A stretch of DNA of 64,000 bases from Magallana gigas (GCF_963853765.1 NC_088857.1:4836001-4900000); one strand, 5' to 3'. Positions 31,458 to 45,615 are shown, numbered from the stretch's first letter. A program made the numbers and translations. Notes: generated by a model from the sequence alone, not told the origin.

Positions 31458-33695
31458 AATCCCAAAACACGTTTGTTGTATTCGATCACCAATTAAACTC
31501 CACAACATCGAATTTTCAAATGCTTTGTAATATCTCCATCTTGTTGGAATGAAAGCTCATGCTTCTATCCATGTTTACTGTTAGTCAAAATGAACTTTTT
31601 GAGAAACTGTTTTGCAGTTCCTCTGATAGCACTTCAACTTTCCCAAGCATCTTAAGCTTTTAGTACCTGTTTTGAATTTCTGTAGCAAAACATTACTTAT
31701 ATAACGGTGTGAAGTGAAGCAGCATGGAACCAGCGGCAATGAAAAACTTCCTGATCTAAGTCGTCGTCCCAATAACAGTTCAAAGAGACCTGCGCAGATT
31801 TTAATTGATCGTTAGCAGTTTTATCTTCGGCATCTTCTGTTGCATAACCCTCCCTAACTCCTCCCAAAAATTCGAATCACTAAGAGCACGTGTTAAGGGT
31901 GTTTGCATACCTCTTGTGTGAACACAAACTAGGTTGTAACCATATATTGTGGTTTCAAAGCACTCAGATTCAAAAACCCAATGCTTTCCGATTGCCCACT
32001 TCATTAAATTCTGAGAGTCACGTGGTGCAGATCACGATCAAAATCCAACAAAATACAACTCACATTGAATTGAAATGTGTTTTAGCATCCAGGAAGAGTC
32101 GGTTTATTTTTACCAAGAAGACTGGAAAAAAGGAAGTGCTTCATAATTATATAGATTTACATCCTCCTAACGTACGACGTACAGAAGTGCAGTAAACAAA
32201 AACAAAACAATGGTGACACATACAAATACACTCACGCTTTTAAAAGTCATAACTTTAAATGCATTTGTGTTTTAGTTTTTATTATTTAAGAAGGTCACAG
32301 AGAGATGACCAGTATATGTGTGTATAGTAGTGGGTGTGGTGGATTTTAGGGCAACAGACAATTTAACATATCACAGAGGTCTCTTCACCTGTAAACATCT
32401 AAGTCGTTCTTATCAGTGATCAGATGTTTTTGTTTTTGTACCATTATAAGAGTACGTATATTGTTGATAAACTTTGGCAAGAAAGAATATGTACAACGCA
32501 AAGAAATTCTAAATATGGTTAATGTATTTATAATTTTATATGTATAGGATATATGTCTCACAGTTTCCTTTTTTCCTTTAAAAAATAATCATAAAACGCC
32601 CTTTAATATCTTGAATACTCTGCTTAAGTATTTGGTTAGGAATCTGGGTCATCTTTTTCTGAGAAACATATTTTCAAACTCATACTTTTCCAGAAAAAAT
32701 GATATTCCTTATGGAAGTATAAAAGCGTTTATCGATTTACAACCTCTTATTATGTGTTTGAGGGTGGAGACACCAAACGACAAGGGTTATTTTTAAGAAT
32801 ATCTTATTTTCGAGAAAAATGGTATTTTCTTTTATTTCTATGGAAAGTTTGATATTTGGTTTATTTTATTGATTACTTTACTACAACTTTATTAAAATGT
32901 TTCCTTTTAAAGGAGACTGTTTTAGTCTGAAAATGCCACGACCATCCACCACTCTTTAATCAGTTTTGGGGTGGTTTGGGGTGTAGATACGCCATGTCGA
33001 GTTGTTAATGCAAGCAAGGTACACTAAGGATCAGCAAAACAAAAACAAAAACAAAACCCACCAAACAAACACCATTTGCTGAAATGCTCAACTTCATGTA
33101 TCATAATAATTCAGGTACTAGTACATGCAGATATGCAAAGAAGAAACATATATTATGATCCATCATCTATATATATTATTACAATAAGCTTTTATTTAGA
33201 AACTGATATTACAAATTGATAACTTCTTGTATGATATATCATAATAAACCCATCCATCTGTACTAGGAACCGTTCTGTATCAATGATCTCCATAACCCTT
33301 TCCAGGAGCCATTCCACGAAGATTCCCAAAAATGTCAGCCCCTCTAAGAATTTTCCCACGGGACAGGTTGCTGGGGGAACAAGAGGACAGCTCTGTACAC
33401 CCACGCCAGCGGAGTGGGTCGCACGCTGTCCCCCTAACGGTCTGCATTAAATAGCGCCCTCTGTCCGACAAGTTCACGTCGATCACGCGGATTCCGGACT
33501 GTCAATCACTCATGTCATTTAAGGGGAGAGGGGGACGGTATAACAAACAAGTTTCTTGTGGTGACCTCTGATGTCCACTTAGATCACAATAAAGATCTTT
33601 TTTTTCAATGAAAGTGTTCGACGTATGATGTTTATATATGATGTTTATAAATATATATTAACGGCATTCGACAGTCTTCGCCATTACTGAACATT

Positions 33696-34802
33696 ATGCA
33701 GACCATGGTGTTGGCTCTCTTCTGCTGGATATGTACAGGACACTTAGCGGGTAAATATCTTGCGCAGCTCCTAATGAATTTAAATATTATGTAACGACAT
33801 GAATATCCGGGACTTTTTAGTTCTTACATAATTCTTTTTCAAATTGAATTCAAATTGTCGCAAGTTATATTTACTTAAAAAAAATATTTCTCGCCTCTTT
33901 ACATACATGTAGCTTATCACGTGAGAAGTGTACACGTTTGATATAACGTCAACGTAATTATGTCAAAAATTGATGTGTGAAAACGTCTAGAAATCTGTTA
34001 TGTTTTCTGCTAGGAAGTTAAATTAGATAGAACTCTAAATAAGAGATAACTTTTAAAGTTACTTTGGTAAACTGAGATTTTAGATTACGCGCGGAGCAAA
34101 CATTGCATTTGGTTAGTTATTAAGGACTTTTATTGGGATAACCAGATTGACGATAAAATTGTTCACATGTGTTAACAAACTAATCTTTTTTATTGTTAGT
34201 AAACCATCGTTTGTTGTTTAAAATCAGCAGAATGTTTTTCTGACAAATAGAATAATTTTGTTTTTGCAGGGTCCTTTTTCATTTCTTCCAAGAGAAAGAT
34301 AAAAACGAGAAATGATGAGGGTACTGGCAGTCTGAGTGATATTCTGGGACAAATGAACGAGTTGATGAACTTCGCTCTCTCCGTCGCTGGTCCATTGTCC
34401 GGAACAAGGAAAGGCCAATCAGACATTGTCAAAGACAGCTTTGTTTGTCCCTCGTATAAATGCTCCGATCAGATAGAACCCGGATGTCGGCAGTCCGTGT
34501 ATTACGTCATTCAGGGACAGAGATGCATGGGTTGTGACGTAGACATCTGTAAAGTGGAGAGACGGAGGGAAAACGCTGGAAAATTATTGCGAAATCGTTC
34601 AAAACTTAACGTGGACGGGACCATTGAGAAACCCATTTCTGTGAATTCCATTGGTTTTGAAAAGCGCTGGCTTTTCCCGAGAAACAGACAACAAGAGCGG
34701 TGGGACCAGCCCAATTCTCTTTTTCCGGTGCTGACTGTGCCCGATGTCGATCGTCTACCCCCGGGGTCAGAGAATAGTTGGATTACCGGGTCCCTGTTCT
34801 AA
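33696..34802 (+). CDS. Secreted protein (195 aa) with a 6-Cys module, uncharacterised
   Basis: Exon 1 (33696-33750; MQTMVLALFCWICTGHLA, phase 1) plus exon 2 (34270-34802); module CPSYKC-x7-C-x12-CMGC-x4-C; AATAAA at 34892. Confidence 0.8.
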
Positions 34803-36287
34803 TCTCCTCGCCACCCCACCCTATGATCGCTATAATTCCACACACTCTAAAAATTAACCGACGAAGATTTTGTCGCATTCCATTTTGGCATAATAAAATG
34901 CGAAAATTGTATGTTTTTTATATCCGTTTGTACTCTAAACTTTTGCTTTATTGAGATATATATTTTAATAAAATATGATATGAATTATGATCTTGTTTTA
35001 TCTTAATGTGATCACTTATACTCAGCCGGACTACGTGACTAGGGTTGACCCCCACACCAGTGTGGCAAGTGACGTGATCCACTCTCAGTGCACCAAATTG
35101 TATCCTATCTGGACACCATCTTCTTGAACATGGCAAGCACTTAATAAAAAGATTAAATTTAATCTGAGTGCATGTAGTCTAAGTGGAGGCAATTTTAAAA
35201 CACGAATATAGGCTTTTAATTGATATGCCCTGTGGATTTGAAAACTGATACAAGGCGGTTGCATTGACCATTGCACGATTATTATGGCTGATTGGTAATA
35301 TAATGTTTTATTGTCTTGTTTTTATTTTGAGTATTTTTGTTGAGATTTGTACATTCGTTCTTATATCACATATATTATACTATGGTATCACCAACAGACA
35401 TTTTTTTTGGTCATATACGATTTACTGGTATATCTAACGTGCAACATTAGCGACTTCAGAACTTTGCTGTCACCCAAAATTACAAGGTACGAAATGAAAT
35501 ATTACAGAAAACCTTTGGTTTGTTACAATATTGTAAAAGCTGGATGTGTACTGATGAAGCAAAACTTTAGAGATGTCTGCACCAAAGTTTTCGTTCGTCT
35601 AAAGGGGGAAAACCATAGCGTGCACTTGAAAAAAAACCCATGTAATTATTAGGAGCAGTGAATGTTAGCCATCAATTTAAACGGCAATAGATATACTTCA
35701 ATTTGTAGAATGTCCTTTTCGACATCGGAAATATCAATTACTGTATTGGCCGTTATATTCAGTGTGACGGCTTCTCGAATTAAACGTTATGGAGATATTT
35801 CCGTCATTTGGTTGTAGTGATTTCATGTTCAGTTCGGTTTTATTCTCACCACAAGACACTAAGACATTAACCATATACATTCGTTATCTCTGACATTTGA
35901 TTTTCAAGGAAATACTGGTAAAATTCTTGATAAATATGAAAATGTAGAAATCTGTAGAAATTGAACAGAATAAGTAATGAATTGTAGTAAAACAACAAAC
36001 CAATCAAGGCTAGAACACAGTGATGAAATGATTTATGAAAATGCCAAAGTGGAATTTTCCACACGTCAATAAGATGCCCACCTCCCCTCCCAAAGAAGAA
36101 AAAATCAGATGGTAGACCGTTTTTTGAAGAGTTAATAACCACTTTTGATATTGGCGACTCTCACCTGCTAGGTATTCTAACCTTAATGACAATTATTGTA
36201 AGGAAAGTAATTCAATTGTTGTAGGAAAAATGATTTCCTATGGTTATTTAGAATAAAAACGAATTTAGATCAATAAAAACTTACTAG

Positions 36288-37121
36288 AACAAGCATTCTG
36301 AGAGTATTGCATAAGCAATACACGTCCCCTACCGGTTTGTATTCTTCTATGAAAGCTTCCAAGCACACAGCTATTTTAGAGCTATTGTAAACGAGATGTC
36401 ATGCTTTAATCAGAGATAAAAGAACAGGGGAAATTAAATCTATATAGTTGATTTAGAAATTAAATACAAAATAGGTAAAATAATACTCTTTATTTCATCT
36501 CCTGTAATTTCGCCAAGTCTATTCTGTATTCGCTGGTAAAAACAATGCACTGTTATGCACAATATCATTTCTTACCGTCTTCTGTACCCTGAATCAAACC
36601 AAACAGTTAAACAGCCCAACCCGACAACGAACCCGATTGTAATAATAATACAAAAAAAACCCTGCCGATTAAATTGACAACACAATGCTTGACACTATTT
36701 TATAGAATTTATTTGTTTGTTAGAAATGATAAAAGGAATGGTACAGGAAAAGGAATGGTACAAATAACGCACGATATTATTACTGACTACATACTGACCT
36801 CGTTTATTCAGTTACACACCGAAACCGATAACGAACCCGAACATTAAAAAATTGGAATATAAAAAATTAATTTTCTCGAAAATATGTCAATCAGACGCTA
36901 CAAAAGTGTAAACTTGATCTGTAGTTTGACATTTTGAAGCTGTTCAGCAAGTTTCATATTATTCCTCAAATGCATAAAGAAAAAAAGTGTGGAAAACTGA
37001 AGTGGGACAGACAGACGGACTGACGGACGGACAGACAGACGGACGGACGGACGGACAGACGGACTGACAGACGCAGAGGAAAGCTATAGTCCCCTCCGGT
37101 GAAACCGGTAGGGGACTAATA
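36288..37121 (+). mobile_element. Non-autonomous Helentron-type element (CvA/Pearl-like HINE)
   Basis: 5' AACAAG..GTATTGC..GCAATACACGTCCCCTACCGG, a GACG/GACA microsatellite (~37007-37070) and a 3' hairpin TAGTCCCCTCCGGTGAAACCGGTAGGGGACTA. Confidence 0.85.
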
Positions 37122-37386
37122 AAATGACTTACAAAGGAAAATTGAATTCTAATGCGAATAAAAAAAATCCTTTATGATCTTAAATCCGCAAGAAAATTTA
37201 AATTTTTCCTTTGGAAAAAAACTTCCAGTAATGGAATTCCTGCAGAAAAATGCTCTCATAGAGGAATAAGATTCCATTTGTCGTATACGTACATATTTCT
37301 CTATATACCCGGTGTCCTAAGGAAAATCATTTTCTCCGAAGAAATTATTTTACAAAAGTGCATGTATCTAAAGAGGTAGATGAGGT

Positions 37387-37450
37387 TATTAGTCCCCTAC
37401 CGGTTTCACCGGAGGGGACTATAGCTTTCCTCTGCGTCCGTCAGTCCGTC

Positions 37451-37482
<32 letters not shown>

Positions 37483-38200
37483 CCACTTCAGTTTTCCACA
37501 CTTGTTTCCTTAATGCATTTGAGGAATAATATGAAACTTACTGAACAGCTTCAAAATGTCAAACTACAGATCAAGTTTACACTTTTATAGCGTTTGGTTG
37601 ACATATTTTCGAGAAAATTAATTTTTTTATGTTCCAATTTTTTAATGTTCGGGTTCGTTATCGGGTTCGGTGTGTATTGAATAAACGAGGCCACTGTGTA
37701 GTTAGAAATAATATCGTGCGTTACTTTTACCATTCCCTTTATCATTTCTAACAAAAAAATAAATTCTGTAAAATAGTGTCATACATTGTGTTGTAAATTT
37801 AATCGGCAGGTTTTTATGTATTATCACAATCGGGTTCGTTGTCGGGTTCGGCTGTTTAACTGTTTGGTTTGATTCGGGGTACAGAAGACGGTAAGAAATG
37901 ATATTGTGCATAACAGTGCATCGTTTTCAGAAATTTTTACCGGCGAATACCTAATGGACTTGGCGAAATTACATGAGATAAAATAAAGAGTATTATTTTA
38001 CCGACTTTGTATTTAACTTCTATATAAACTATAACGTTATAGTTTGAATTTCCTCAGAGTCTGTTCTTTTATCTCTGGTTAAAGCATGGCATCTCGTTTA
38101 CAATAGTTCTGAAATAGTTGTGTGCTTGGAAGCTTACGTAGAATAATACAAACCGGTAGGGGACGTGTATTGCTTTTGCAATACTCTCAGAATGCTTGTT
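37387..38200 (-). mobile_element. Second HINE copy in inverted orientation
   Basis: Reverse complement of the same architecture, with several indels relative to the first copy. Confidence 0.85.
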
Positions 38201-41166
38201 GTCCCTGAAATAATAGTGGTTAAATATTATACATGTCATTACATTCCTCGCCTTTTTTAAAATCATGAATTAAATCAAAGGATGATTATGGTTTCCTTGA
38301 CAGTTGATTTTATAAACTCAATACTGTTATCTTATACAACTGTTCTACTTTTATTATTCGAAAAAATTAATGTATTACAAATCTCACAGCACACAAACAA
38401 TTCACAGTTGCTTAAAAGAAAAGTTGAAGTTTTCACTTTTGAATAAAATAAAATCAACAACTTTTAGCGACAAGTTCCACATTTTTTGTCTATTTTTTTT
38501 TCAGGCAAAAGATTGTTTTCAAGTGACCAGCAAAATAGTCTTGATTTTTTAATTTGCACAACAAGTAATGTTTACAACACTAGGCGAAAATACTTGGTCA
38601 TTTCGTTAAACGGATCTGATGATGTTTACATCTGATCAGATCAGTCCTTTGATCTTGATTGGGTCGTTTTATGATAGAATTATTTGCCAGTTTTAAGAAA
38701 CGTAAACCCTATCCCACTCATTTTATGTTTAATTATGATACAGAGAACAATTGGATTGTTTGTTTATTGAATACCTATACAACAACTCGATTGTTTGCAT
38801 CCCCTCACCAAATCGACAATACGTTCTATCTGATTAAGAACCTATCTGGGGCGATATTATTTTCTGACAGACCACAAACATCTGTGCTGGACTTGATGAT
38901 CCTCCCACTGTCATCGTACAACTCTGACACTGCGCAAACATTTAAAAACTTCATCAAAGTGTCTCACTGTTGTTCACACATGAATGAATGACAACGGCAT
39001 TTCCCGTCTTTGCTGACGCAAGTATTTCGTTAACATCGCTCGCCAGGGGACGGACACGTTTGACCCTTTTTTATCAGACAGAGACTCTCTTCAAACGCCG
39101 CTATAAAAGGATGCATTATTTTGGACCTTTATTTATTAAGCTTGGAACATATGTACGACATTTATAAGACTATAAACACCGTCCCTGGCGAAAAGGAGGG
39201 GCGGCGAGTAGATCAAACTCTGTCAACTGTACAGTTTGGATCCCGTGACGTGTATTTCCTGGTTCAAACAACGCTTAAATGTTGAATGTCATTTGACAAA
39301 TGCATATCTATGAATGCTAATTATATTATAACACAGAGTTAAAATTCCTTCGTTTACATGTCACTTTGCATTGTTTGGACGATTAAGATACTATTATGAG
39401 ATCATGATTGTTTACACCAGTAACAATTTATGTGAATTTAACTTTTACAGACATTGTATTATGCTTTTTTTTTTACATACAAAGGACGCATAAATTCGGC
39501 AGACTCTTTATTTTTTAACAACACACCCGTCACTGAACTTGCTCCTTCCTAAACTCTGATTTTGATATGTACATATCAAAAGGATTGTGTATTCTTCAGT
39601 AATGTCAGTTGTACAATTTCTTGTATTCCCTTGTCAAACTTATGTTAATTCCTGTATGTTTTGAATTTTATTGTTGATATTATGTGATGAATAAGTTTTG
39701 TTAAATTCAACTATCCAGACCAGACGATGCAAGTATTTGAGCTCTATAACTTTGAACTTGATATCGTCTAGAAAACAAAGAGAAATAATCAATGTCTTGG
39801 TTTTGGAGATGTTTGCAAAACCATTGGCCACCGCAATGACCCGGCACTTAGGTCTAGCGTCCTTAAATCTCTGATAGGTCCAAGTTCTGATTTATTCAAT
39901 AAGCGCAATGCCCCCCCCCCCCCCGACACTTAATAAAAAAAAAGATGTGTGTCGTTTATCACATAGCAAGATTTTTATATATAAATCTTTCTACATGTCC
40001 TCTTTGCAGCATAAAGCCAAAACAACATTTCCAGCTTCTCTCTAAAAAAAAAAACCGAAAATAATTCATACACAATGATTAAAATCTAGTATCGGTCTCT
40101 TATTTCTAAAATCATACATTGAAAAAAAGCATTCTATGTAAATCAATAAAAAATATATAATGGTGTGTCTAGCCACCTTAAACAAAGTTGAAGGCTTTCT
40201 GGCGACTTTTTAGATTCCTTTAAATGTATTATCTCTAATTCTTGTGTATATGTAAAGCCATTTCAACAAAAGTCTGGAAACATGGATGCATTGGTTTTAA
40301 CATCAGATTTGTTTGATATTTCTTGCGATAAAATTTCTATGAAATGTCTCCGCTAATCCGTCAATCCACTTTGCATCTGATTGTATCGATCAATCGATGC
40401 TCCTAGGCATATTAAAATACGGTTTGTATTTTTTAAAGTAATAATATAAACAATTCAAAGCAAAGTTGATTCGTTCAGTCGGTAACAATGATTTTAACAG
40501 TGCTCAATCTCAGCTCAGAAAATCTCTGTAAAAAATCATCAGCCGCTTGAAAATTTGCTTCATGCCACCCCCACCTAACGGGGAAAGTATGTGGCCCCAG
40601 ACTGGATACATATCACTTGTTCTAGCTACGCCTCTACTGCTCCTCGCCATGCTGTCCAACATGTTTGTTTTCAACCAGCAGACGCAGGAAAAAACTCGTT
40701 TTTAAGAATCGTTAAGGGGAAAACCCATCCTAATTAATATTCCGGCCACTCGTGTTATGTTTTCTATTTACAGCTCATTTAAAATGTTTTCATATATTAA
40801 GATATTCTAAATGAGGACCTATTTACGGGATATGATGGTTTGACCTTTTGTGGCTTACATGACCTATTGCGGAAGCTGAGGATATTTCTATATATTTTTT
40901 AGCTCGTTTCATCAAAGTAGGACGTGCATCCAAACATAGCACAAGGACAAAAAAATTCAGTTCTAATTGGTGTCAACCTAATTACAATAATTGATTTACA
41001 CAGATTTGAACTCTCAAAGATCACAGAGCTGTTTTTCACTTTCGTTTATCTCCATTCTGATCTTGAGTATATACTTGGCGATAACTAAAAATATAAACAA
41101 GCAAAAGAGTGGAAAATATAGCCGGATACAGAAATACTTTGAGATAGGAATTGGAGGTGATATTAT

Positions 41167-41535
41167 ATAAATAGTGCCTGTTTGGGAGGGTAACAGCTGA
41201 AATTGACACCCCGAGAAAACCATTGTCAACCGACGCGAAGCGGAGGTTGACAATGGTTTTCGAGGGGTGTCAATTTCAACAGTTACTGTTATCCTCCCAA
41301 ACAAGCACTATTTATTTTGTTATACTGAATGTCTTAATTCTTAAGAAAATTTTACTGCTTTTATATAGGAATAACGTGAATTCTACAGCGAACCGTAAGC
41401 GCATAATTTTCGCGCATGTAACATTTTTTAATGTTACCCGTTGCTAAGTGCGTTGCTAACGCTGAGGGTAATAGAAAATATTATTAACTGCGTCTTAACC
41501 AATCAGATTTCAGTATTTAACATGAAAGTATAACA
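41167..41535 (+). mobile_element. Hairpin-tail element, Crypton/Eulor-like
   Basis: Palindrome 41167-41315 centred on GCGAAGC (41235-41241). The tail repeats GAGGGTAA and ends AACCAATCAG..TATAACAA. Confidence 0.7.
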
Positions 41536-42692
41536 ATTGTATCTATCAGTATAAACAATAAGCAACGATGTTATCAATTCCATATAATAAAGCCACACAA
41601 CATTGCACTTGCGCTTTCCCTCTACCACCTCTAAAAAACCGACCTCCCTCGGACCACCCCACCCCCGCGAAAATTCCTCCTGGATCCACCCTTGAAATTA
41701 TATATTCTTATTGTTGTGCATCATCTTACATCACCTGTTTATCAATGAATCATTCATTGTGATGCAGCAAGCGTTTCATCTCATGCCCCCGAATTATGCA
41801 GAATGATTACGAAACCTTAGTTTTTTGCATTATATTTGTTTAATAATATCCGTTTTTGCAATACACTTGTATAATTAATATCCGAGTCATATATAGGCGG
41901 TGCAAACATTGTACAAAGTATGTTGACGAAGTGAAATGTATTTTTTGCAGTTTTCTTATGGAAGTTAAAAACCAAACTTAGAATATTCAAAGTAACAGAG
42001 CCGTATTGTTTGTCTCCCATATTTGTTTGACTGGTTTTTATGGTTTATTTTTCAACTTGTTCAAAACCTTCCATGATTTTATTTTTCTGATAATTTTCAA
42101 GGTTTAGTATTTTATATATTTTTCATAGTATTATAAAAAAGAGACCTTTTTAAAAGATGTCTGTGTATCATAGAAGAATTAAAATCTATCTTGTGAACAA
42201 AACAACAAGTATTTCGGAGATAATATGTAATTTTCAATTGATATGAAAAATGATTTTTTGCTAATTTTATAAGTCTAATATGTAAATTAGAAAACTGGGG
42301 GAAAAATCATTTATGACAAAAAGAAAAAAAAGTAGTCTGCAATCAATTCATGGTGTTAATCATGCTAATCGGATAATTATCAAATATGATAAATCATCCT
42401 TTGACGACGCGATTAAATGTTTTTTCCATTACTATCATAATCCCTCATCGACTGGCAGTTAAAACATTCAGTATGTCTTCTGGGCGACCAATGTTTAAAA
42501 AAAAAATTGAATGTAATAATGTTCTCAATTGATTTGACAATCGCGCTCTCCACTTGAATGACTCCGGTATTTTTAACACCGGGGCAATTAATATCATTTC
42601 TATTTACCGTTAATTAAGATCTCGGGCGGTTATAGGCTGACGTGTTGAGAGCATCTGGAATTTGCCGAGGAAATACAAGTTACAATTTTGGG

Positions 42693-45615
42693 ATGAAGAA
42701 CTTGATTATATGGATTTTATTTTCAATCTTTCATATCATAAAATGTAAGTATGAATTATCTACATCAAAAATGTTGAAATATTAATTGCAATTTTTTTCC
42801 TGGAATTTGCTCTTTGTTCATAATATTAAGTAAATCAAAAATTCGATATCATTTTTTTATTCATAATGGAGAGATTGTAAAAAATATTAGCAGTTCATCG
42901 ATATTCGTAAGAAATTGGAAATCAGCATATCAAACGAACGAAAAAAAAATCTTTTCCAAATTCATAAAACTGTCTATTGCAAGCGACAAATATGTTTTCA
43001 TTTCATAGTTAGGGCGATCAAAGTTATAGCAGCAATTAACAAACTCATGATGAATCGAATGGACCATAAATGTCTTTATTCATCTTTTTAGGAGCACATA
43101 TATAGAACTGGTTGTCTAGCTAGATCTGTTAAGTTAAAAAAAAATTAAATTTTTACTTGGAACTGTAATTAGTATCACTTCCTTCATGTCTAGAATATAT
43201 TACAGTAATTACCGCTAATTTTGTCTGATAAGAGTTTTGTGCACATGATTTCTCGGTGTGTTGAATATGAAATTCATCGTTTCCTGACCCATCTCTGACA
43301 TTTACTTCATTAGCGGGAGAAATAAAAATCACAGATGATTCATGGCATGACATTTCAAAACTTGTTTATCTCTTCACTACGGTCAATTCACTCAATTCGA
43401 CAAATTAAAAATGAAAAGCGAGTCATGTTTTGCATACCAAAATATTTGTAGATGTTCTCGTAATTTGGATATATTTTTTTTTATTTTAGGCCAGATACCT
43501 GCAATATTTTTCCCTCCAAATTTTGTTCGACACGAGTTCCGCCGAATAGGACCGGAAGTGGACCCGGTCTGTCCGCCGCTACGCTGCGCTCCTGTCCCAG
43601 AGGGCTGTGCCCAGCCTCGCATTATAATGGTAAATGGACGACGCTGTCCGTTTTGTCCGAGAAACATCTGTACTGATTTGGAACCTCCTCGGGAGGGATT
43701 GGAAGGAAATAGGATACTCCTCTCCATAGCTGAAACTAATAGTCAAAGAGAAAGCAACAATTCACCCCCTACCTCAACAAGGGATACCGAACAGAGAACA
43801 GATAGACCACGGCCAGCTTCGCCACGATCCACTCCTAATGGCCGATCCTCTCCTGACCCAGACTCCCCTTTCTTTGCACCAAATGAACGACGAGTGGTGC
43901 GGACTGGGCGGCAAGGTGTGCGAGGGACACGTATAGACCCCCCAACTCGTCGACGGACACGTGTAGACCCCCCAGCACGTCAACGATCTGGGTCATCGCG
44001 GAATCGGTCCCCGTCGACAGGATCTCGAGCTCGCACCGGGGAAAGATCCAGATCAACCGACCCTTCTGAAAAACCACCCTCCAAAATTCAGCCAGTTGAA
44101 AACCAGCAAAACGCACATATTCTTTTTCCGCTTGAACCTTTTAGAGAGAACGTTATTAGTGACACCGAGCCAAAATCAAATAAAAACGAAAAATCTCAGA
44201 AAAGTGTCCCTGTAAAACCACCTGTCACACCGGCGCCAACCAAACCGATGAGCACACCGGCGCCCACACATGGCACTCGGTCCGGAAGGCAAGCGCGTCA
44301 GAATATTCATTTACTCTTCCATGCGCTGAACCGAATTGGATCTCAATCTCGAAATCAGCAACCTAACAACAACCAACCGAACAGACCTCCACAGACGCCG
44401 TTCCTCCCCCCTCTCCACGCCCTGGCAGGTTCTCCGTTCACGCAGGTCGTACAACAAGGCTCACAGAATAACAATAGACAGAATGGCGATACACAGTCGT
44501 CAAATCGACAGCGACAAGCTATAAACGGTATTCACCCTCTGCTGCCAATGTTCCTGTTACAACAAGCAAGACTAAATAGTCTTAATGCCCCAACTCCTAG
44601 CCCAGCACCGAATGCACCAAATGCTGCTGCACAGAATACTCCACAGAGAAACAACGCTCCAAATTTACAACATTTGCCTCCACACTTACGAGCCATGATG
44701 CCGTTTCCATTTTTCAATCCAGCAGCAAACCAACAAAATACAATTCCTGGAATGACTATGCAAGCCAACCAGGCGGGTCCAGCAAATGGTGAGCCCTCGG
44801 TTCCACCCGTCACTCCCACAGTACAGGCCGAGATCAACCAGTGGATGGACCAGATGGCGATGCCCATTCAGGAGGTTCTTGGAGAGGTTTCACCTTCACA
44901 GTCCGGCAGTCGGCAGCAGCCTAATCTTAACCAGATTCAGAGAAACCAGTTGACTCCTCCAGCTCAGCAAGTGTTAAATATCGGCCAACAACAGAATCCC
45001 CAAACACAGCAGCCAAGAATTCCTAATCAGGCATTTTTCCAGCAATGGCTACAGCAAATGGCTCTTCAACGACAACGTCTTGCTGCAGGACAAGCACCGG
45101 GACAAATGACGCCCCAAGGTGCTCCATCAAATCGAGCAACACCACAAACGCCGAATTCTAATCTTCTTTTCCAGAACATGGACCCGTCTCGAATGAATAC
45201 TGCTGCCCAGAACCCTGTAAACCCAGCGGCTACAACTCAGAATAATGCAGCGGGATCTAACGGTGGATTTACTCAGTGGTTAGATTCTCTTGCGACACAG
45301 ATTCAGCACCAACTCGAAGATGGTTCGAACCCTGTGCAACAAACAAACGCAATTCCTCAACAGTTGGTAAATAATATGCCACAACACTTGAATGTGATTC
45401 AAAATTTTAACAATGTGCCTTCGCCGAATGGGGTTGGGGGAGAAGTCAATTTTAATAACTGGCTCGAAAACATGGTATCGCCTATTCAACAAGAACTCAC
45501 TAGATCCCCCGGAAATCCCCAGGGGTCGCCTGCAAGGGGTGGGGCTGATATTCCAGCTAGTGCGTGGATTAATGAGATGGTAGATCCAATACAACAAGGT
45601 CTAGGAAGACGGTAG
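42693..45615 (+). CDS. Secreted protein (725 aa): 6-Cys module, then R/S/P-rich and Q/N/P-rich low-complexity regions
   Basis: Exon 1 (42693-42744; MKNLIIWILFSIFHIIK, phase 1, GTAAGT donor) plus exon 2 (43490-45615); module CPPLRC-x6-C-x12-CPFC-x4-C; ends QQGLGRR; AATAAA at 46013. Confidence 0.85.

What the first reader, a model, noticed from the sequence alone, without database searches (positions are those of the whole stretch)
34446..43671. Unrecognised 6-Cys module shared by two otherwise unrelated neighbouring secreted proteins
CPSYKCSDQIEPGCRQSVYYVIQGQRCMGCDVDIC (34446-34550) and CPPLRCAPVPEGCAQPRIIMVNGRRCPFCPRNIC (43570-43671) follow CP-x3-C-x6/7-C-x12-C-x2-C-x3-IC, with a conserved [QN]G-x-RC turn. 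Both genes are plus strand with a 52-55-bp phase-1 signal exon plus one exon, implying ancient duplication with retention of only this module. The spacing differs from antistasin (C-x-C end) and pacifastin. Basic sites nearby (KRK and ERRRE in one, FRR in the other) could release it as a small disulfide peptide. It is a candidate new extracellular domain for matrix assembly, protease inhibition or defence.
Basis: partly seen in the sequence, partly recalled or inferred. Interest (0 to 1): 0.7.

Follow-up and report, generated by a model that had tools for sequence, protein, structure and literature searches.

The report
Unnamed bivalve six-cysteine secreted mini-domain
Two neighbouring oyster genes share a real, roughly 35-residue six-cysteine domain that no tested domain model recognises, that occurs at 22 or more sites on one oyster chromosome and across all major bivalve groups, and whose function is untested.

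Summary
Both stretches translate exactly as reported. A profile built only from foreign copies picks out these two frames among 1570 in the window (E 1e-11 and 8e-11; next best 0.45).

Both two-exon gene models stand. Gene 1's intron is skipped in contigs from three studies. Gene 2's signal exon matches its Ostrea orthologue.

The pair belongs to a larger family:
- This oyster genome has at least 22 matches, all on contig C5.
- Relatives occur in every major bivalve clade looked up, plus a variant in a bdelloid rotifer.
- Copies occur alone after a signal peptide, ahead of low-complexity tails, or in arrays of up to 16.

AlphaFold2 models the module confidently (pLDDT 91) as a small beta-hairpin knot, with no match among solved or predicted structures.

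Pfam finds nothing. The antistasin, Kazal, VWC and WAP models find their own domains in this genome but never these sites, and profile-profile comparisons are negative. The MEROPS I84 cysteine array differs. One paralogue carries an automatic "Kazal-like" name that I could not reproduce.

The module is the best-conserved part of both genes. My best guess, which is inference, is a disulfide-locked binding head on secreted or surface proteins. Protease inhibition is the main rival.

The parts
33696..33750 (+). Gene 1 exon 1: start codon and signal peptide MQTMVLALFCWICTGHLA, 55 nt, phase 1
   Evidence: Sequence, exon search, spliced contigs, orthologue N-termini.
33751..34269 (+). Gene 1 intron, 519 nt, GT..AG
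   Evidence: Skipped in contigs of runs X1, X5 and X6 from three studies.
34270..34802 (+). Gene 1 exon 2: rest of the coding sequence including the stop. The mature protein is about 177 aa.
   Evidence: Orthologues at 63-98% identity over the full length.
34329..34385 (+). Gene 1 conserved N-terminal helix (SLSDILGQMNELMNFALSV)
   Evidence: Predicted helix at residues 20-38. The motif is conserved as far as Pinctada.
34446..34550 (+). Module 1: CP-x3-C-x7-C-x12-C-x2-C-x4-C
   Evidence: AF2 pLDDT 90.9. 89-94% identical to the Saccostrea and Ostrea orthologues.
34551..34571 (+). Basic cluster KVERRRE directly after module 1; a possible convertase site lying in a predicted helix
   Evidence: Conserved as KVKKRRE, KLERRKE and KVQQRRRK in orthologues. 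Helix at residues 92-105. Cleavage is inferred only.
34752..34799 (+). Gene 1 invariant C-terminal motif RLPPGSENSWITGSLF
   Evidence: RLPPGSENSWITGS is identical in all eight oyster sequences, with one L-to-M change after it. ENSWIT is kept in Pinctada.
42693..42744 (+). Gene 2 exon 1: signal peptide MKNLIIWILFSIFHIIK, 52 nt, phase 1
   Evidence: The Ostrea orthologue starts MKNLMIWTLFSVFGILKG.
43490..45615 (+). Gene 2 exon 2: module followed by about 650 aa of Q/N/P-rich low-complexity chain, including the stop
   Evidence: Orthologues at 49-59% identity.
43570..43671 (+). Module 2: CP-x3-C-x6-C-x12-C-x2-C-x4-C
   Evidence: 74-77% identical to orthologues, against 48-58% for the rest of the protein.

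Best explanation
SHOWN. Both stretches are copies of one autonomous, roughly 35-residue extracellular domain. It has six invariant cysteines in the pattern C-P-x3-C-x6-8-C-x12-C-x2-C-x4-6-C. It also has a conserved Ile-Pro before the third Cys, an aromatic pair on one hairpin strand, and an Asn-Gly turn.

The two window genes are old paralogues within a family of at least 22 sites, all on one oyster chromosome. Both have a short phase-1 signal exon plus one exon, and most of the other copies examined show a candidate for the same layout. The family occurs across Bivalvia, with a variant in a bdelloid rotifer. Pfam does not model it, and none of the members looked up carries a curated name.

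INFERRED. The six cysteines form three disulfides that lock a beta-hairpin mini-knot. The conserved residues build the scaffold, and the variable loops, mainly between Cys1-Cys2 and just after Cys2, give binding specificity.

I think the domain most likely works as a stable binding or anchoring head. It would tie otherwise disordered secreted chains (gene 2's Q/N/P-rich tail, or the Gly/Tyr, Asn/Arg/Gly/Trp and Gly/Phe/Gln tails of paralogues) or long surface arrays to a partner in an extracellular matrix or at the cell surface.

Gene 1 is a more compact, strongly conserved member. It may be cut at the basic cluster directly after the module.

The confidence figure refers to the functional reading. 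That the domain family is real and unassigned I hold at about 0.9.
For: Reality and family:
- Exact translations and the leave-out profile at E 1e-11 and 8e-11.
- 20-22 genomic matches, all on C5, while an actin control hits C2-C9.
- 72 representative proteins at E<1e-3 among 1.84 billion, with up to 16 repeats per protein.
- Named members from Ostrea, Saccostrea, C. virginica, Pinctada, Pecten, Ylistrum, Mytilus, Potamilus, Sinanodonta, Solemya, Mactra, Ruditapes, Mercenaria, Dreissena and Adineta vaga.

Fold: AF2 gives pLDDT 90.9 with a hairpin at residues 22-25 and 28-31. In the full gene 1 model the module is the only confidently folded part.

Secretion: signal exons in the window genes, candidate signal exons in most paralogues, and signal peptides read by eye in many homologues.

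Architecture:
- The module sits ahead of low-complexity tails in several subfamilies.
- It sits after Lustrin_cystein repeats in P0050, and in P0021 and P0116 below Pfam's cut-off.
- Some 10-16-repeat proteins end in hydrophobic, GPI-signal-like tails.

Constraint: the module is the best-conserved part of both genes, at 74-94% identity against 48-60% for the rest.

The conserved columns are Cys, Pro, Gly and hydrophobic or aromatic residues. The variable columns lie in the loops.
Against: - No proteomic, tissue or biochemical datum was available, so no partner is known.
- The disulfide pairing was not seen, because model coordinates are not exposed.
- The 60-80-aa module-only members, and gene 1's near-invariant module flanked by basic sites, look more like inhibitors, defence peptides or hormones than matrix anchors.
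- Tandem arrays are also typical of multi-headed protease inhibitors.
- One paralogue is automatically named Kazal-like in UniRef.
- The Lustrin_cystein link is weak. Only P0050 passes Pfam's cut-off.
Confidence: 0.5

Rival explanations
1. The module is a new type of canonical-loop serine-protease inhibitor. The exposed Cys2-Cys3 loop would be the reactive site. Single modules would act as free inhibitors and tandem arrays as multi-headed ones, as in Kazal, antistasin or MEROPS I84 proteins of bivalves.
For: - It is a small, secreted, three-disulfide-sized domain found alone or in arrays of 2-16.
- The first residues after Cys2 are among the most variable, while the following Ile-Pro is fixed. 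They are also the positions that differ most between orthologues of both window genes.
- The spacing of the first five cysteines is loosely like classical Kazal, and some repeats read C-T-L-E-[FY]-I-P. From my memory, that resembles the ovomucoid reactive loop.
- UniRef auto-names paralogue P0032 as a Kazal-like domain-containing protein.
- Bivalves are known to expand inhibitor families (PMC9198434).
Against: - The Kazal_1, Kazal_2 and antistasin models find 77, 81 and 17 genuine sites in this genome, none at a module site.
- hhalign probabilities are 0.2% for Kazal and 1.2% for antistasin, against 99.2% for the positive control.
- The Kazal signature C-G-x-D-G-x-T-Y is missing, and there is no helix between Cys4 and Cys6.
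- Foldseek against PDB and Swiss-Prot returns no inhibitor.
- The module is under strong purifying selection in both window genes, unlike the fast-evolving contact residues typical of defence inhibitors.
- The loop is mostly hydrophobic.
Confidence: 0.25
2. Gene 1, and perhaps other compact members, is a secreted signalling precursor. Convertases would cut at the conserved basic sites and release a disulfide-knotted peptide and/or the invariant C-terminal peptide, which then act on a receptor.
For: - The module is near-invariant across Ostreidae, and the C-terminus RLPPGSENSWITGS is invariant.
- Four elements are conserved as far as Pinctada: the helix, the module, FE[KN]RW and ENSWIT.
- SKR and the post-module RRR/KKRR/RRK/RRRK cluster are conserved.
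- The rest of the chain is predicted to be disordered.
- The transcript was assembled in many runs.
Against: - There is no peptidomic evidence and no known neuropeptide match.
- The FEKRW site is FENRW in Ostrea and Pinctada, so it is not a conserved dibasic site.
- The post-module basic cluster is predicted to be helical.
- Gene 2's FRR is not conserved.
- Most family members have tails or arrays that do not fit a hormone.
Confidence: 0.12
3. The family encodes antimicrobial or other defence peptides that expanded by local duplication.
For: - There are clusters of near-identical copies at 15.26 Mb and 54.09-54.12 Mb, one of which carries a stop codon.
- Members of 60-80 aa consist of a signal peptide plus the module only.
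- Some modules carry a net charge up to +8.
Against: - The mean net charge is only about +1, and many modules are acidic.
- The window genes are old, single-copy orthologues under purifying selection.
- Members with long tails or 10-16 repeats do not fit this role.
Confidence: 0.08
4. The cysteines bind zinc (a zinc-ribbon-like knuckle pair, C-x4-C ... C-x2-C) rather than forming disulfides.
For: There are weak, non-significant profile hits to zinc ribbons and zinc fingers: RPA70, eS27 and CTCF at E 0.15-5, and zf-AN1 in 3 of 57 members.
Against: - Signal peptides appear in both window genes and in many relatives, read by eye, so the proteins are secreted.
- Six cysteines, not four, are invariant.
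- None of the hits is significant.
Confidence: 0.03

Closest known systems
Kazal-type inhibitor domain (Pfam PF00050 / PF07648; PROSITE PS51465)
   Same: It has six cysteines, and the first five are similarly spaced (Cys2-x7-Cys3-x10-Cys4-x2-Cys5 in classical Kazal, from my memory). A beta-hairpin follows Cys3. There is a Pro-containing loop between Cys2 and Cys3. It occurs singly or in long arrays. One paralogue carries the automatic UniRef name 'Kazal-like domain-containing protein'.
   Different: The C-G-x-D-G-x-T-Y signature is absent. Only 2-6 residues separate Cys5 and Cys6, so there is no room for the Kazal helix, and none is predicted. Both Pfam models miss every copy while finding 77-81 true sites in the same genome. 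hhalign gives 0.2%. Foldseek returns no Kazal match.
Antistasin domain (PF02822)
   Same: It starts C-P-x3-C, has Asn-Gly before a C-x2-C, has six cysteines, is small, and occurs in tandem arrays.
   Different: Antistasin is 26 residues long, with Cys2-x3-Cys3, N-G-C directly, and a terminal C-x-C. The model finds 17 true domains on C1, C3 and C6 and none at module sites. hhalign gives 1.2%.
VWC domain (PF00093), C-terminal part
   Same: There is a local C-P-x3-C motif. hhalign aligns 9 columns at 18.8% probability.
   Different: VWC has ten cysteines and a C-C-x2-C end. There is no HMM match, and true VWC sites lie on C3, C6 and C7.
MEROPS family I84 (cvSI / scSI inhibitors of bivalves)
   Same: These are mollusc-restricted, small, secreted proteins made of two 6-Cys halves. 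Their genes have expanded by tandem duplication (PMC9198434).
   Different: The I84 array is C-x5-8-C-x4-5-C-x7-9-C-x4-C-T-C, and its genes have three exons. The module array is C-x4-C-x6-8-C-x12-C-x2-C-x4-6-C, in two-exon genes.
Small Cys-rich domain plus low-complexity tail architecture of mollusc matrix proteins (for example Lustrin A; Pfam Lustrin_cystein PF14625)
   Same: A signal peptide, a compact Cys-rich domain and long repetitive Gly-, Asn-, Gln- or Pro-rich chains. The module follows Lustrin_cystein repeats in P0050 (38.6 bits) and, below the cut-off, in P0021 and P0116.
   Different: The module itself is not a Lustrin_cystein domain.

Membership tests
Antistasin (PF02822) | Match to the family HMM | tested here: not met
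   No hit for either protein, either module or 57 family members at E<=10. In the genome the model finds 17 sites on C1, C3 and C6, none at a module site.
Antistasin (PF02822) | Cys array C-x3-5-C-x3-C-x10-C-x2-C-x-C, about 26 residues | tested here: not met
   Oyster antistasin domains show this array. The module is C-x4-C-x6-8-C-x12-C-x2-C-x4-6-C. hhalign probability is 1.2%.
Kazal (PF00050, PF07648) | Match to the family HMMs | tested here: not met
   No hit in 57 members, nor in P0032 itself, at E<=10. The 77 and 81 genomic sites include none at module positions. hhalign gives 0.2%.
Kazal (PF00050, PF07648) | C-G-x-D-G-x-T-Y hairpin signature, and an alpha-helix between Cys4 and Cys6 | tested here: not met
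   The signature is present in oyster Kazal domains and absent from the module. The AF2 model has no helix after Cys4.
Kazal (PROSITE profile PS51465) | Score above the PROSITE profile cut-off | not testable with these tools
   The UniRef name of P0032 ('Kazal-like domain-containing protein') suggests that one paralogue passes some automatic rule. The profile is not available here.
VWC (PF00093) | HMM match; ten cysteines with C-x-x-C-x-C and C-C-x-x-C motifs | tested here: not met
   No HMM hit. Genomic VWC sites are on C3, C6 and C7 only. hhalign gives 18.8% over 9 columns, covering the C-P-x3-C motif only.
WAP (PF00095) | HMM match; eight cysteines including a central CC | tested here: not met
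   No HMM hit. The 32 genomic sites include none at module positions. hhalign gives 0.5%.
MEROPS I84 | Twelve cysteines in two halves, with the array C-x5-8-C-x4-5-C-x7-9-C-x4-C-T-C | tested here: not met
   The array quoted from PMC9198434 differs from the module spacing classes.
Pacifastin (PF05375), TIL (PF01826), IGFBP (PF00219) | Match to the family HMM | tested here: not met
   None of these appears among the Pfam hits of 57 members at E<=10. No profile-profile test was run.
The unnamed family itself | Six Cys in the array C-P-x3-C-x6-8-C-x12-C-x2-C-x4-6-C, with I/V-P before Cys3 and N-G before Cys4, behind a signal peptide | tested here: met
   Both window modules score E 1e-11 and 8e-11 against a profile of foreign members. 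Both genes have signal exons. Gene 1 has Q-G rather than N-G at the turn, and I-E-P rather than I-P.

The most novel reading that the evidence does not exclude
The module is a new disulfide-rich fold that founds a new family of canonical-loop protease inhibitors (a new MEROPS family) or of matrix cross-linking heads. It would be ancient in Spiralia (bivalves plus rotifers), and its whole oyster repertoire has stayed on one chromosome. In the single-module proteins, the N-terminal module and the recurrent C-terminal Trp motif might form a head-to-tail assembly pair.
Probability: 0.2. Interest if true: 0.7.

Novelty: new variant of a known kind. Interest (0 to 1): 0.5.

Why it matters
Small disulfide-rich domains underlie much of extracellular biology, including inhibitors, matrix proteins, toxins and hormones. 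Bivalve genomes hold many uncharacterised secreted proteins.

This domain would give a shared annotation to dozens of such proteins per species, from 60-aa peptides to 16-repeat, probably surface-bound, proteins. It is compact (about 35 residues) and confidently modelled, so it could be made synthetically. That makes structure determination, protease-inhibition assays and binding assays straightforward.

Its confinement to a single oyster chromosome, in sites spread over 50 Mb, is also a neat marker for how gene families spread in genomes with conserved chromosomes.

It does not overturn anything known. The value is a new, testable domain family rather than a surprise of principle.

Tried and rejected
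- **Complex prediction.** Gene 1's module region against its own C-terminal 37 residues scored 0.01. The tool gave no verdict, so this is evidence neither way.
- **Whole gene 1 fold.** The C-terminal motif reaches only pLDDT about 56, so there is no sign that it docks on the module.
- **Structure searches with the module model.**
  - Foldseek PDB: best E 2.1.
  - VIA-align over 48,161 chains: nothing at Z>=2.
  - AFDB clusters: the only good match (TM 0.79) is an uncharacterised protein that I take, from its accession, to be a Mytilus family member.
  - AFDB Swiss-Prot: nothing.
  - ESM Atlas by shape: nothing.
  - For a 40-residue model, these blanks do not prove a new fold.
- **ESM Atlas by features.** No usable hit for gene 1 or P0026.
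- **PDB sequence-profile searches.** Only non-significant zinc-finger and zinc-ribbon rows.
- **Literature.** Searches by twelve LOC identifiers, six peptide strings and general terms found no paper on the family.
- **MEROPS I84** was considered because 12 Cys in 71 aa suggested two modules. It was rejected on the published Cys array.
- **Tissue of expression** could not be read, because run descriptions are coded.


Full report
**1. The observation**

The two 34-35-residue stretches share six cysteines, the C-P start, the G-x-R-C turn and the I-C end. BLASTP gives 39% identity over 36 residues (E 6e-8).

To test chance without circularity, I built a profile from 55 modules of other species, leaving out both window rows. 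I searched all 1570 stop-to-stop frames of the window with HMMER's filters off. Only the two reported frames match, at E 1e-11 and 7.6e-11. The next frame is at E 0.45.

**2. Gene models**

Gene 1:
- Exon 1 is 33696-33750. It is 55 nt, encodes MQTMVLALFCWICTGHLA, has a GT donor and is phase 1.
- Exon 2 is 34270-34802.
- Contigs from three runs in three studies join 33750 to 34270, skipping 519 nt with GT..AG ends, and run from about 33578 to 34956.
- The runs are only guessed to be RNA. An intron-less contig seen in three studies is still good evidence of a spliced transcript.

Gene 2:
- Exon 1 is 42693-42744. It is 52 nt, encodes MKNLIIWILFSIFHIIK and is phase 1.
- Exon 2 is 43490-45615.
- The annotated Ostrea edulis orthologue begins MKNLMIWTLFSVFGILKG and then runs into the same QFPP.FFPP sequence.
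- I did not lay reads on gene 2.

**3. A family, not a pair**

A search of the window's own genome (564 Mb, 29 contigs) with the module profile gives 20-22 matches. All lie on contig C5:

| Position on C5 (Mb) | Content |
|---|---|
| 4.87, 4.88, 4.90 | Gene 1, gene 2, and a third copy 1.5 kb beyond the window end |
| 7.42 | One copy |
| 15.26-15.27 | Five to six copies, one with a stop codon |
| 21.46 | One copy |
| 33.96 | One copy |
| 40.60-40.61 | Three copies |
| 54.09-54.12 | Six copies |
| 54.83 | A multi-repeat gene |

A search with a 16-repeat relative again hits only C5. An actin control with the same tool hits C2 to C9, so the restriction to C5 is not a limit of the tool.

Most paralogues examined have a candidate phase-1 signal exon of 46-85 nt. 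Phase-1 introns after signal peptides are common in general, so this is weak evidence of common descent.

**4. Range and architectures**

The oyster-only profile was searched against 1.84 billion representative proteins. It finds 72 at E<1e-3, 23 at E<1e-10 and 8 at E<1e-30.

Named members come from these groups:
- Ostreida: Ostrea, Saccostrea, Crassostrea virginica, Magallana gigas
- Pteriida: Pinctada
- Pectinida: Pecten, Ylistrum
- Mytilida: Mytilus
- Unionida: Potamilus, Sinanodonta
- Protobranchia: Solemya
- Imparidentia: Mactra, Ruditapes, Mercenaria, Dreissena
- A bdelloid rotifer, Adineta vaga, whose repeats end C-x2-C-x2-C

Nearly all are called hypothetical or uncharacterised. I looked up only about 30 of the 72, so absence from other molluscs is not shown.

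The architectures are:
- Signal peptide plus one module, 60-80 aa in total.
- One module ahead of a low-complexity tail. The tails are Gly/Tyr, Asn/Arg/Gly/Trp, Gly/Phe/Gln, or Gln/Asn/Pro as in gene 2.
- Two to five modules in tandem.
- Ten to sixteen modules. Some of these end in a hydrophobic tail that looks like a GPI-anchor signal. That reading is inference.
- One module after Lustrin_cystein repeats.

**5. The two window genes**

Gene 1 has orthologues at 61-68% identity in Ostrea and Saccostrea, and at 37% in Pinctada. Four elements are conserved:
- an N-terminal helix (ILGxMNELMNFA)
- the module
- FE[KN]RW
- the C-terminus P-x-G-x-ENSWIT

RLPPGSENSWITGS is identical in all eight oyster sequences.

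Gene 2 has orthologues at 49-59% identity.

In both genes the module is the best-conserved part:

| Comparison | Module identity | Rest of protein |
|---|---|---|
| Gene 1 vs Saccostrea / Ostrea | 89-94% | 59-60% |
| Gene 1 vs Pinctada | 60% | 30% |
| Gene 2 vs orthologues | 74-77% | 48-58% |

Gene 1's module is closer to paralogues at 7.4 and 54.1 Mb (45% identity) than to gene 2's (33-39%). The two neighbours are therefore old paralogues, not a recent local pair.

On peptide release:
- The basic cluster after gene 1's module (KVERRRE) is conserved as KVKKRRE, KLERRKE and KVQQRRRK.
- Gene 2's FRR is ISR or FPG in its orthologues.
- Release of the module as a peptide is thus conceivable for gene 1 and unsupported for gene 2.

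**6. Structure**

With a 57-sequence alignment, AlphaFold2 models the module at mean pLDDT 90.9. It shows a short turn before Cys3 and a hairpin at residues 22-25 and 28-31, whose turn is the conserved N-G.

In a model of the whole mature gene 1 protein, only three parts are ordered:
- the module, at pLDDT 75-82
- a helix at residues 20-38
- a helix at residues 92-105

Column statistics over 218 distinct modules:
- Fixed: Cys, Pro after Cys1, Ile-Pro before Cys3, an aromatic pair, Gly at the turn, and Gly between Cys4 and Cys5.
- Variable: the Cys1-Cys2 loop and the first residues after Cys2.
- Mean net charge is about +1.

I could not read the disulfide pairing because coordinates are not exposed. 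Three disulfides is an inference from six invariant cysteines in secreted proteins.

**7. Comparison with known families**

Pfam gives no family for either protein, either module, 57 family members or ten long relatives.

I then ran each candidate model on this same genome as a positive control:

| Model | True sites found | At a module site | hhalign probability vs module profile |
|---|---|---|---|
| Antistasin | 17 | none | 1.2% |
| Kazal_2 | 81 | none | 0.2% |
| Kazal_1 | 77 | none | not run separately |
| VWC | 10 | none | 18.8%, 9 columns only |
| WAP | 32 | none | 0.5% |

The 9 VWC columns cover only the C-P-x3-C motif. Two halves of the module alignment compared with each other give 99.2%.

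The Cys array published for the bivalve inhibitor family MEROPS I84 is C-x5-8-C-x4-5-C-x7-9-C-x4-C-T-C, which differs from the module (PMC9198434).

Structure searches found no known fold. The only good AFDB match is TM 0.79 to an uncharacterised protein that I take, from its accession, to be a Mytilus family member.

One caveat remains. UniRef names the 88-aa Magallana gigas paralogue P0032 'Kazal-like domain-containing protein', presumably from a PROSITE-type profile that I cannot run. The spacing of the first five cysteines is loosely Kazal-like. However, the C-G-x-D-G-x-T-Y signature and the helix are missing, and Pfam finds nothing in P0032 itself.

**8. How it most likely works**

Shown:
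- It is a compact, independently evolving domain.
- It sits behind a signal peptide in both window genes and in many relatives.
- It is the most constrained part of its proteins.
- It has a fixed scaffold and variable loops.
- It is combined with disordered tails, with Lustrin-type repeats, or with itself in long arrays.

Inferred: it is a disulfide-locked binding head that attaches secreted or surface chains to a partner. That partner could be another matrix protein, a polysaccharide, a mineral surface or a cell-surface molecule.

I put this at about one half. The main rival is a new canonical-loop protease inhibitor, at about one quarter. That reading would also fit a matrix setting, because shell matrices carry inhibitors. 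A hormone-like role for gene 1 and a defence-peptide role are less likely. Chance or artefact is excluded.

**9. Novelty**

In the libraries I could query, the family is not modelled and carries no curated name. It is a new family within the familiar class of small disulfide-rich extracellular domains, so I rate it as a new variant of a known kind. Interest is moderate. It offers a Pfam-worthy domain, easy to test experimentally, with an unusual single-chromosome distribution, but no functional datum yet.

Other notes of this scan call the genome the Pacific oyster. I did not verify this directly. Several paralogues match Magallana gigas or near-identical database entries.

Noticed in passing
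G000:C5:4901471-4901587 (L029 2235-2600), about 1.5 kb beyond the window's end: A third family gene lies next to the two in the window. It is an open frame of 121 aa ending in the module CPVLNCPVMRVPSRCKVPVFFRYNGRLCRGCYKNVC followed by RRQY and a stop. The local cluster therefore has three members.
   Followed up: partly
G000:C5, 4.87 to 54.83 Mb: All 20-22 detectable copies lie on one 57-Mb chromosome, at eight separate positions, while the control families hit many contigs. In other species, the members I looked up often share a contig too: Ostrea (93.5 Mb), Mactra (41.4 Mb), Mytilus trossulus (82.3 Mb) and Sinanodonta (143 Mb). This hints at conserved linkage.
   Followed up: partly
window 34752-34799; C-termini of P0029, P0037, P0039, P0045, P0051, P0052, P0062, P0067-P0073: Of 30 single-module proteins with a tail, 22 have a Trp within the last 15 residues (about 10 expected from their own composition). 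It is often [DEN]-N-S-W-[AI]. Seven of the 22 are gene 1 orthologues, so there are roughly 7-8 independent subfamilies. Gene 2 and its orthologues have S-[AS]-W-[IF]-N-E-M 16-17 residues from the end. The module and this tail motif may belong together.
   Followed up: partly
window 45559-45615 (end of gene 2): Gene 2's terminal GLGRR, read elsewhere in the scan as an amidation-type signal, is LGGV in the three orthologues aligned. The Trp-centred motifs (QWMDQM, QQWLQQM, TQWLDS, NNWLENM, SAWINEM) are conserved.
   Followed up: partly
window 36288-38200: A large inverted repeat lies between the two genes. Its arms span about 36288-37122 and 37386-38200, are 86-96% complementary in eight collinear blocks, and are separated by about 260 nt. 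It looks like a foldback-type repeat element.
   Followed up: no
L028 3006-4574 (G000:C5:54832005-54833573): A 522-aa open frame holds about ten degenerate, longer-spaced repeats related to the module, for example CPHLMCEPIPVDMPDFCIIPGSLMFQGWSLCKSCDIIYSEC. It is probably the oyster counterpart of the 10-16-repeat proteins of clams.
   Followed up: no
P0041 (Adineta vaga), P0053, P0055, P0060, P0074: A variant of the module ends C-x2-C-x2-C and has a shorter Cys2-Cys3 loop. It occurs in a bdelloid rotifer and in unnamed assemblies, with up to 12 repeats in P0074. P0055 lies on a contig next to bacterial-type rhamnosidase genes.
   Followed up: partly
L008 (G000:C5:15259038-15259139, minus strand): One copy in the 15.26-Mb cluster has an in-frame TGA inside the module (GCPVYNCPPVRPGCALPRYYLLQ*RFCKHCGRDIF) and has lost the last Cys. 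It is a likely pseudogene.
   Followed up: no
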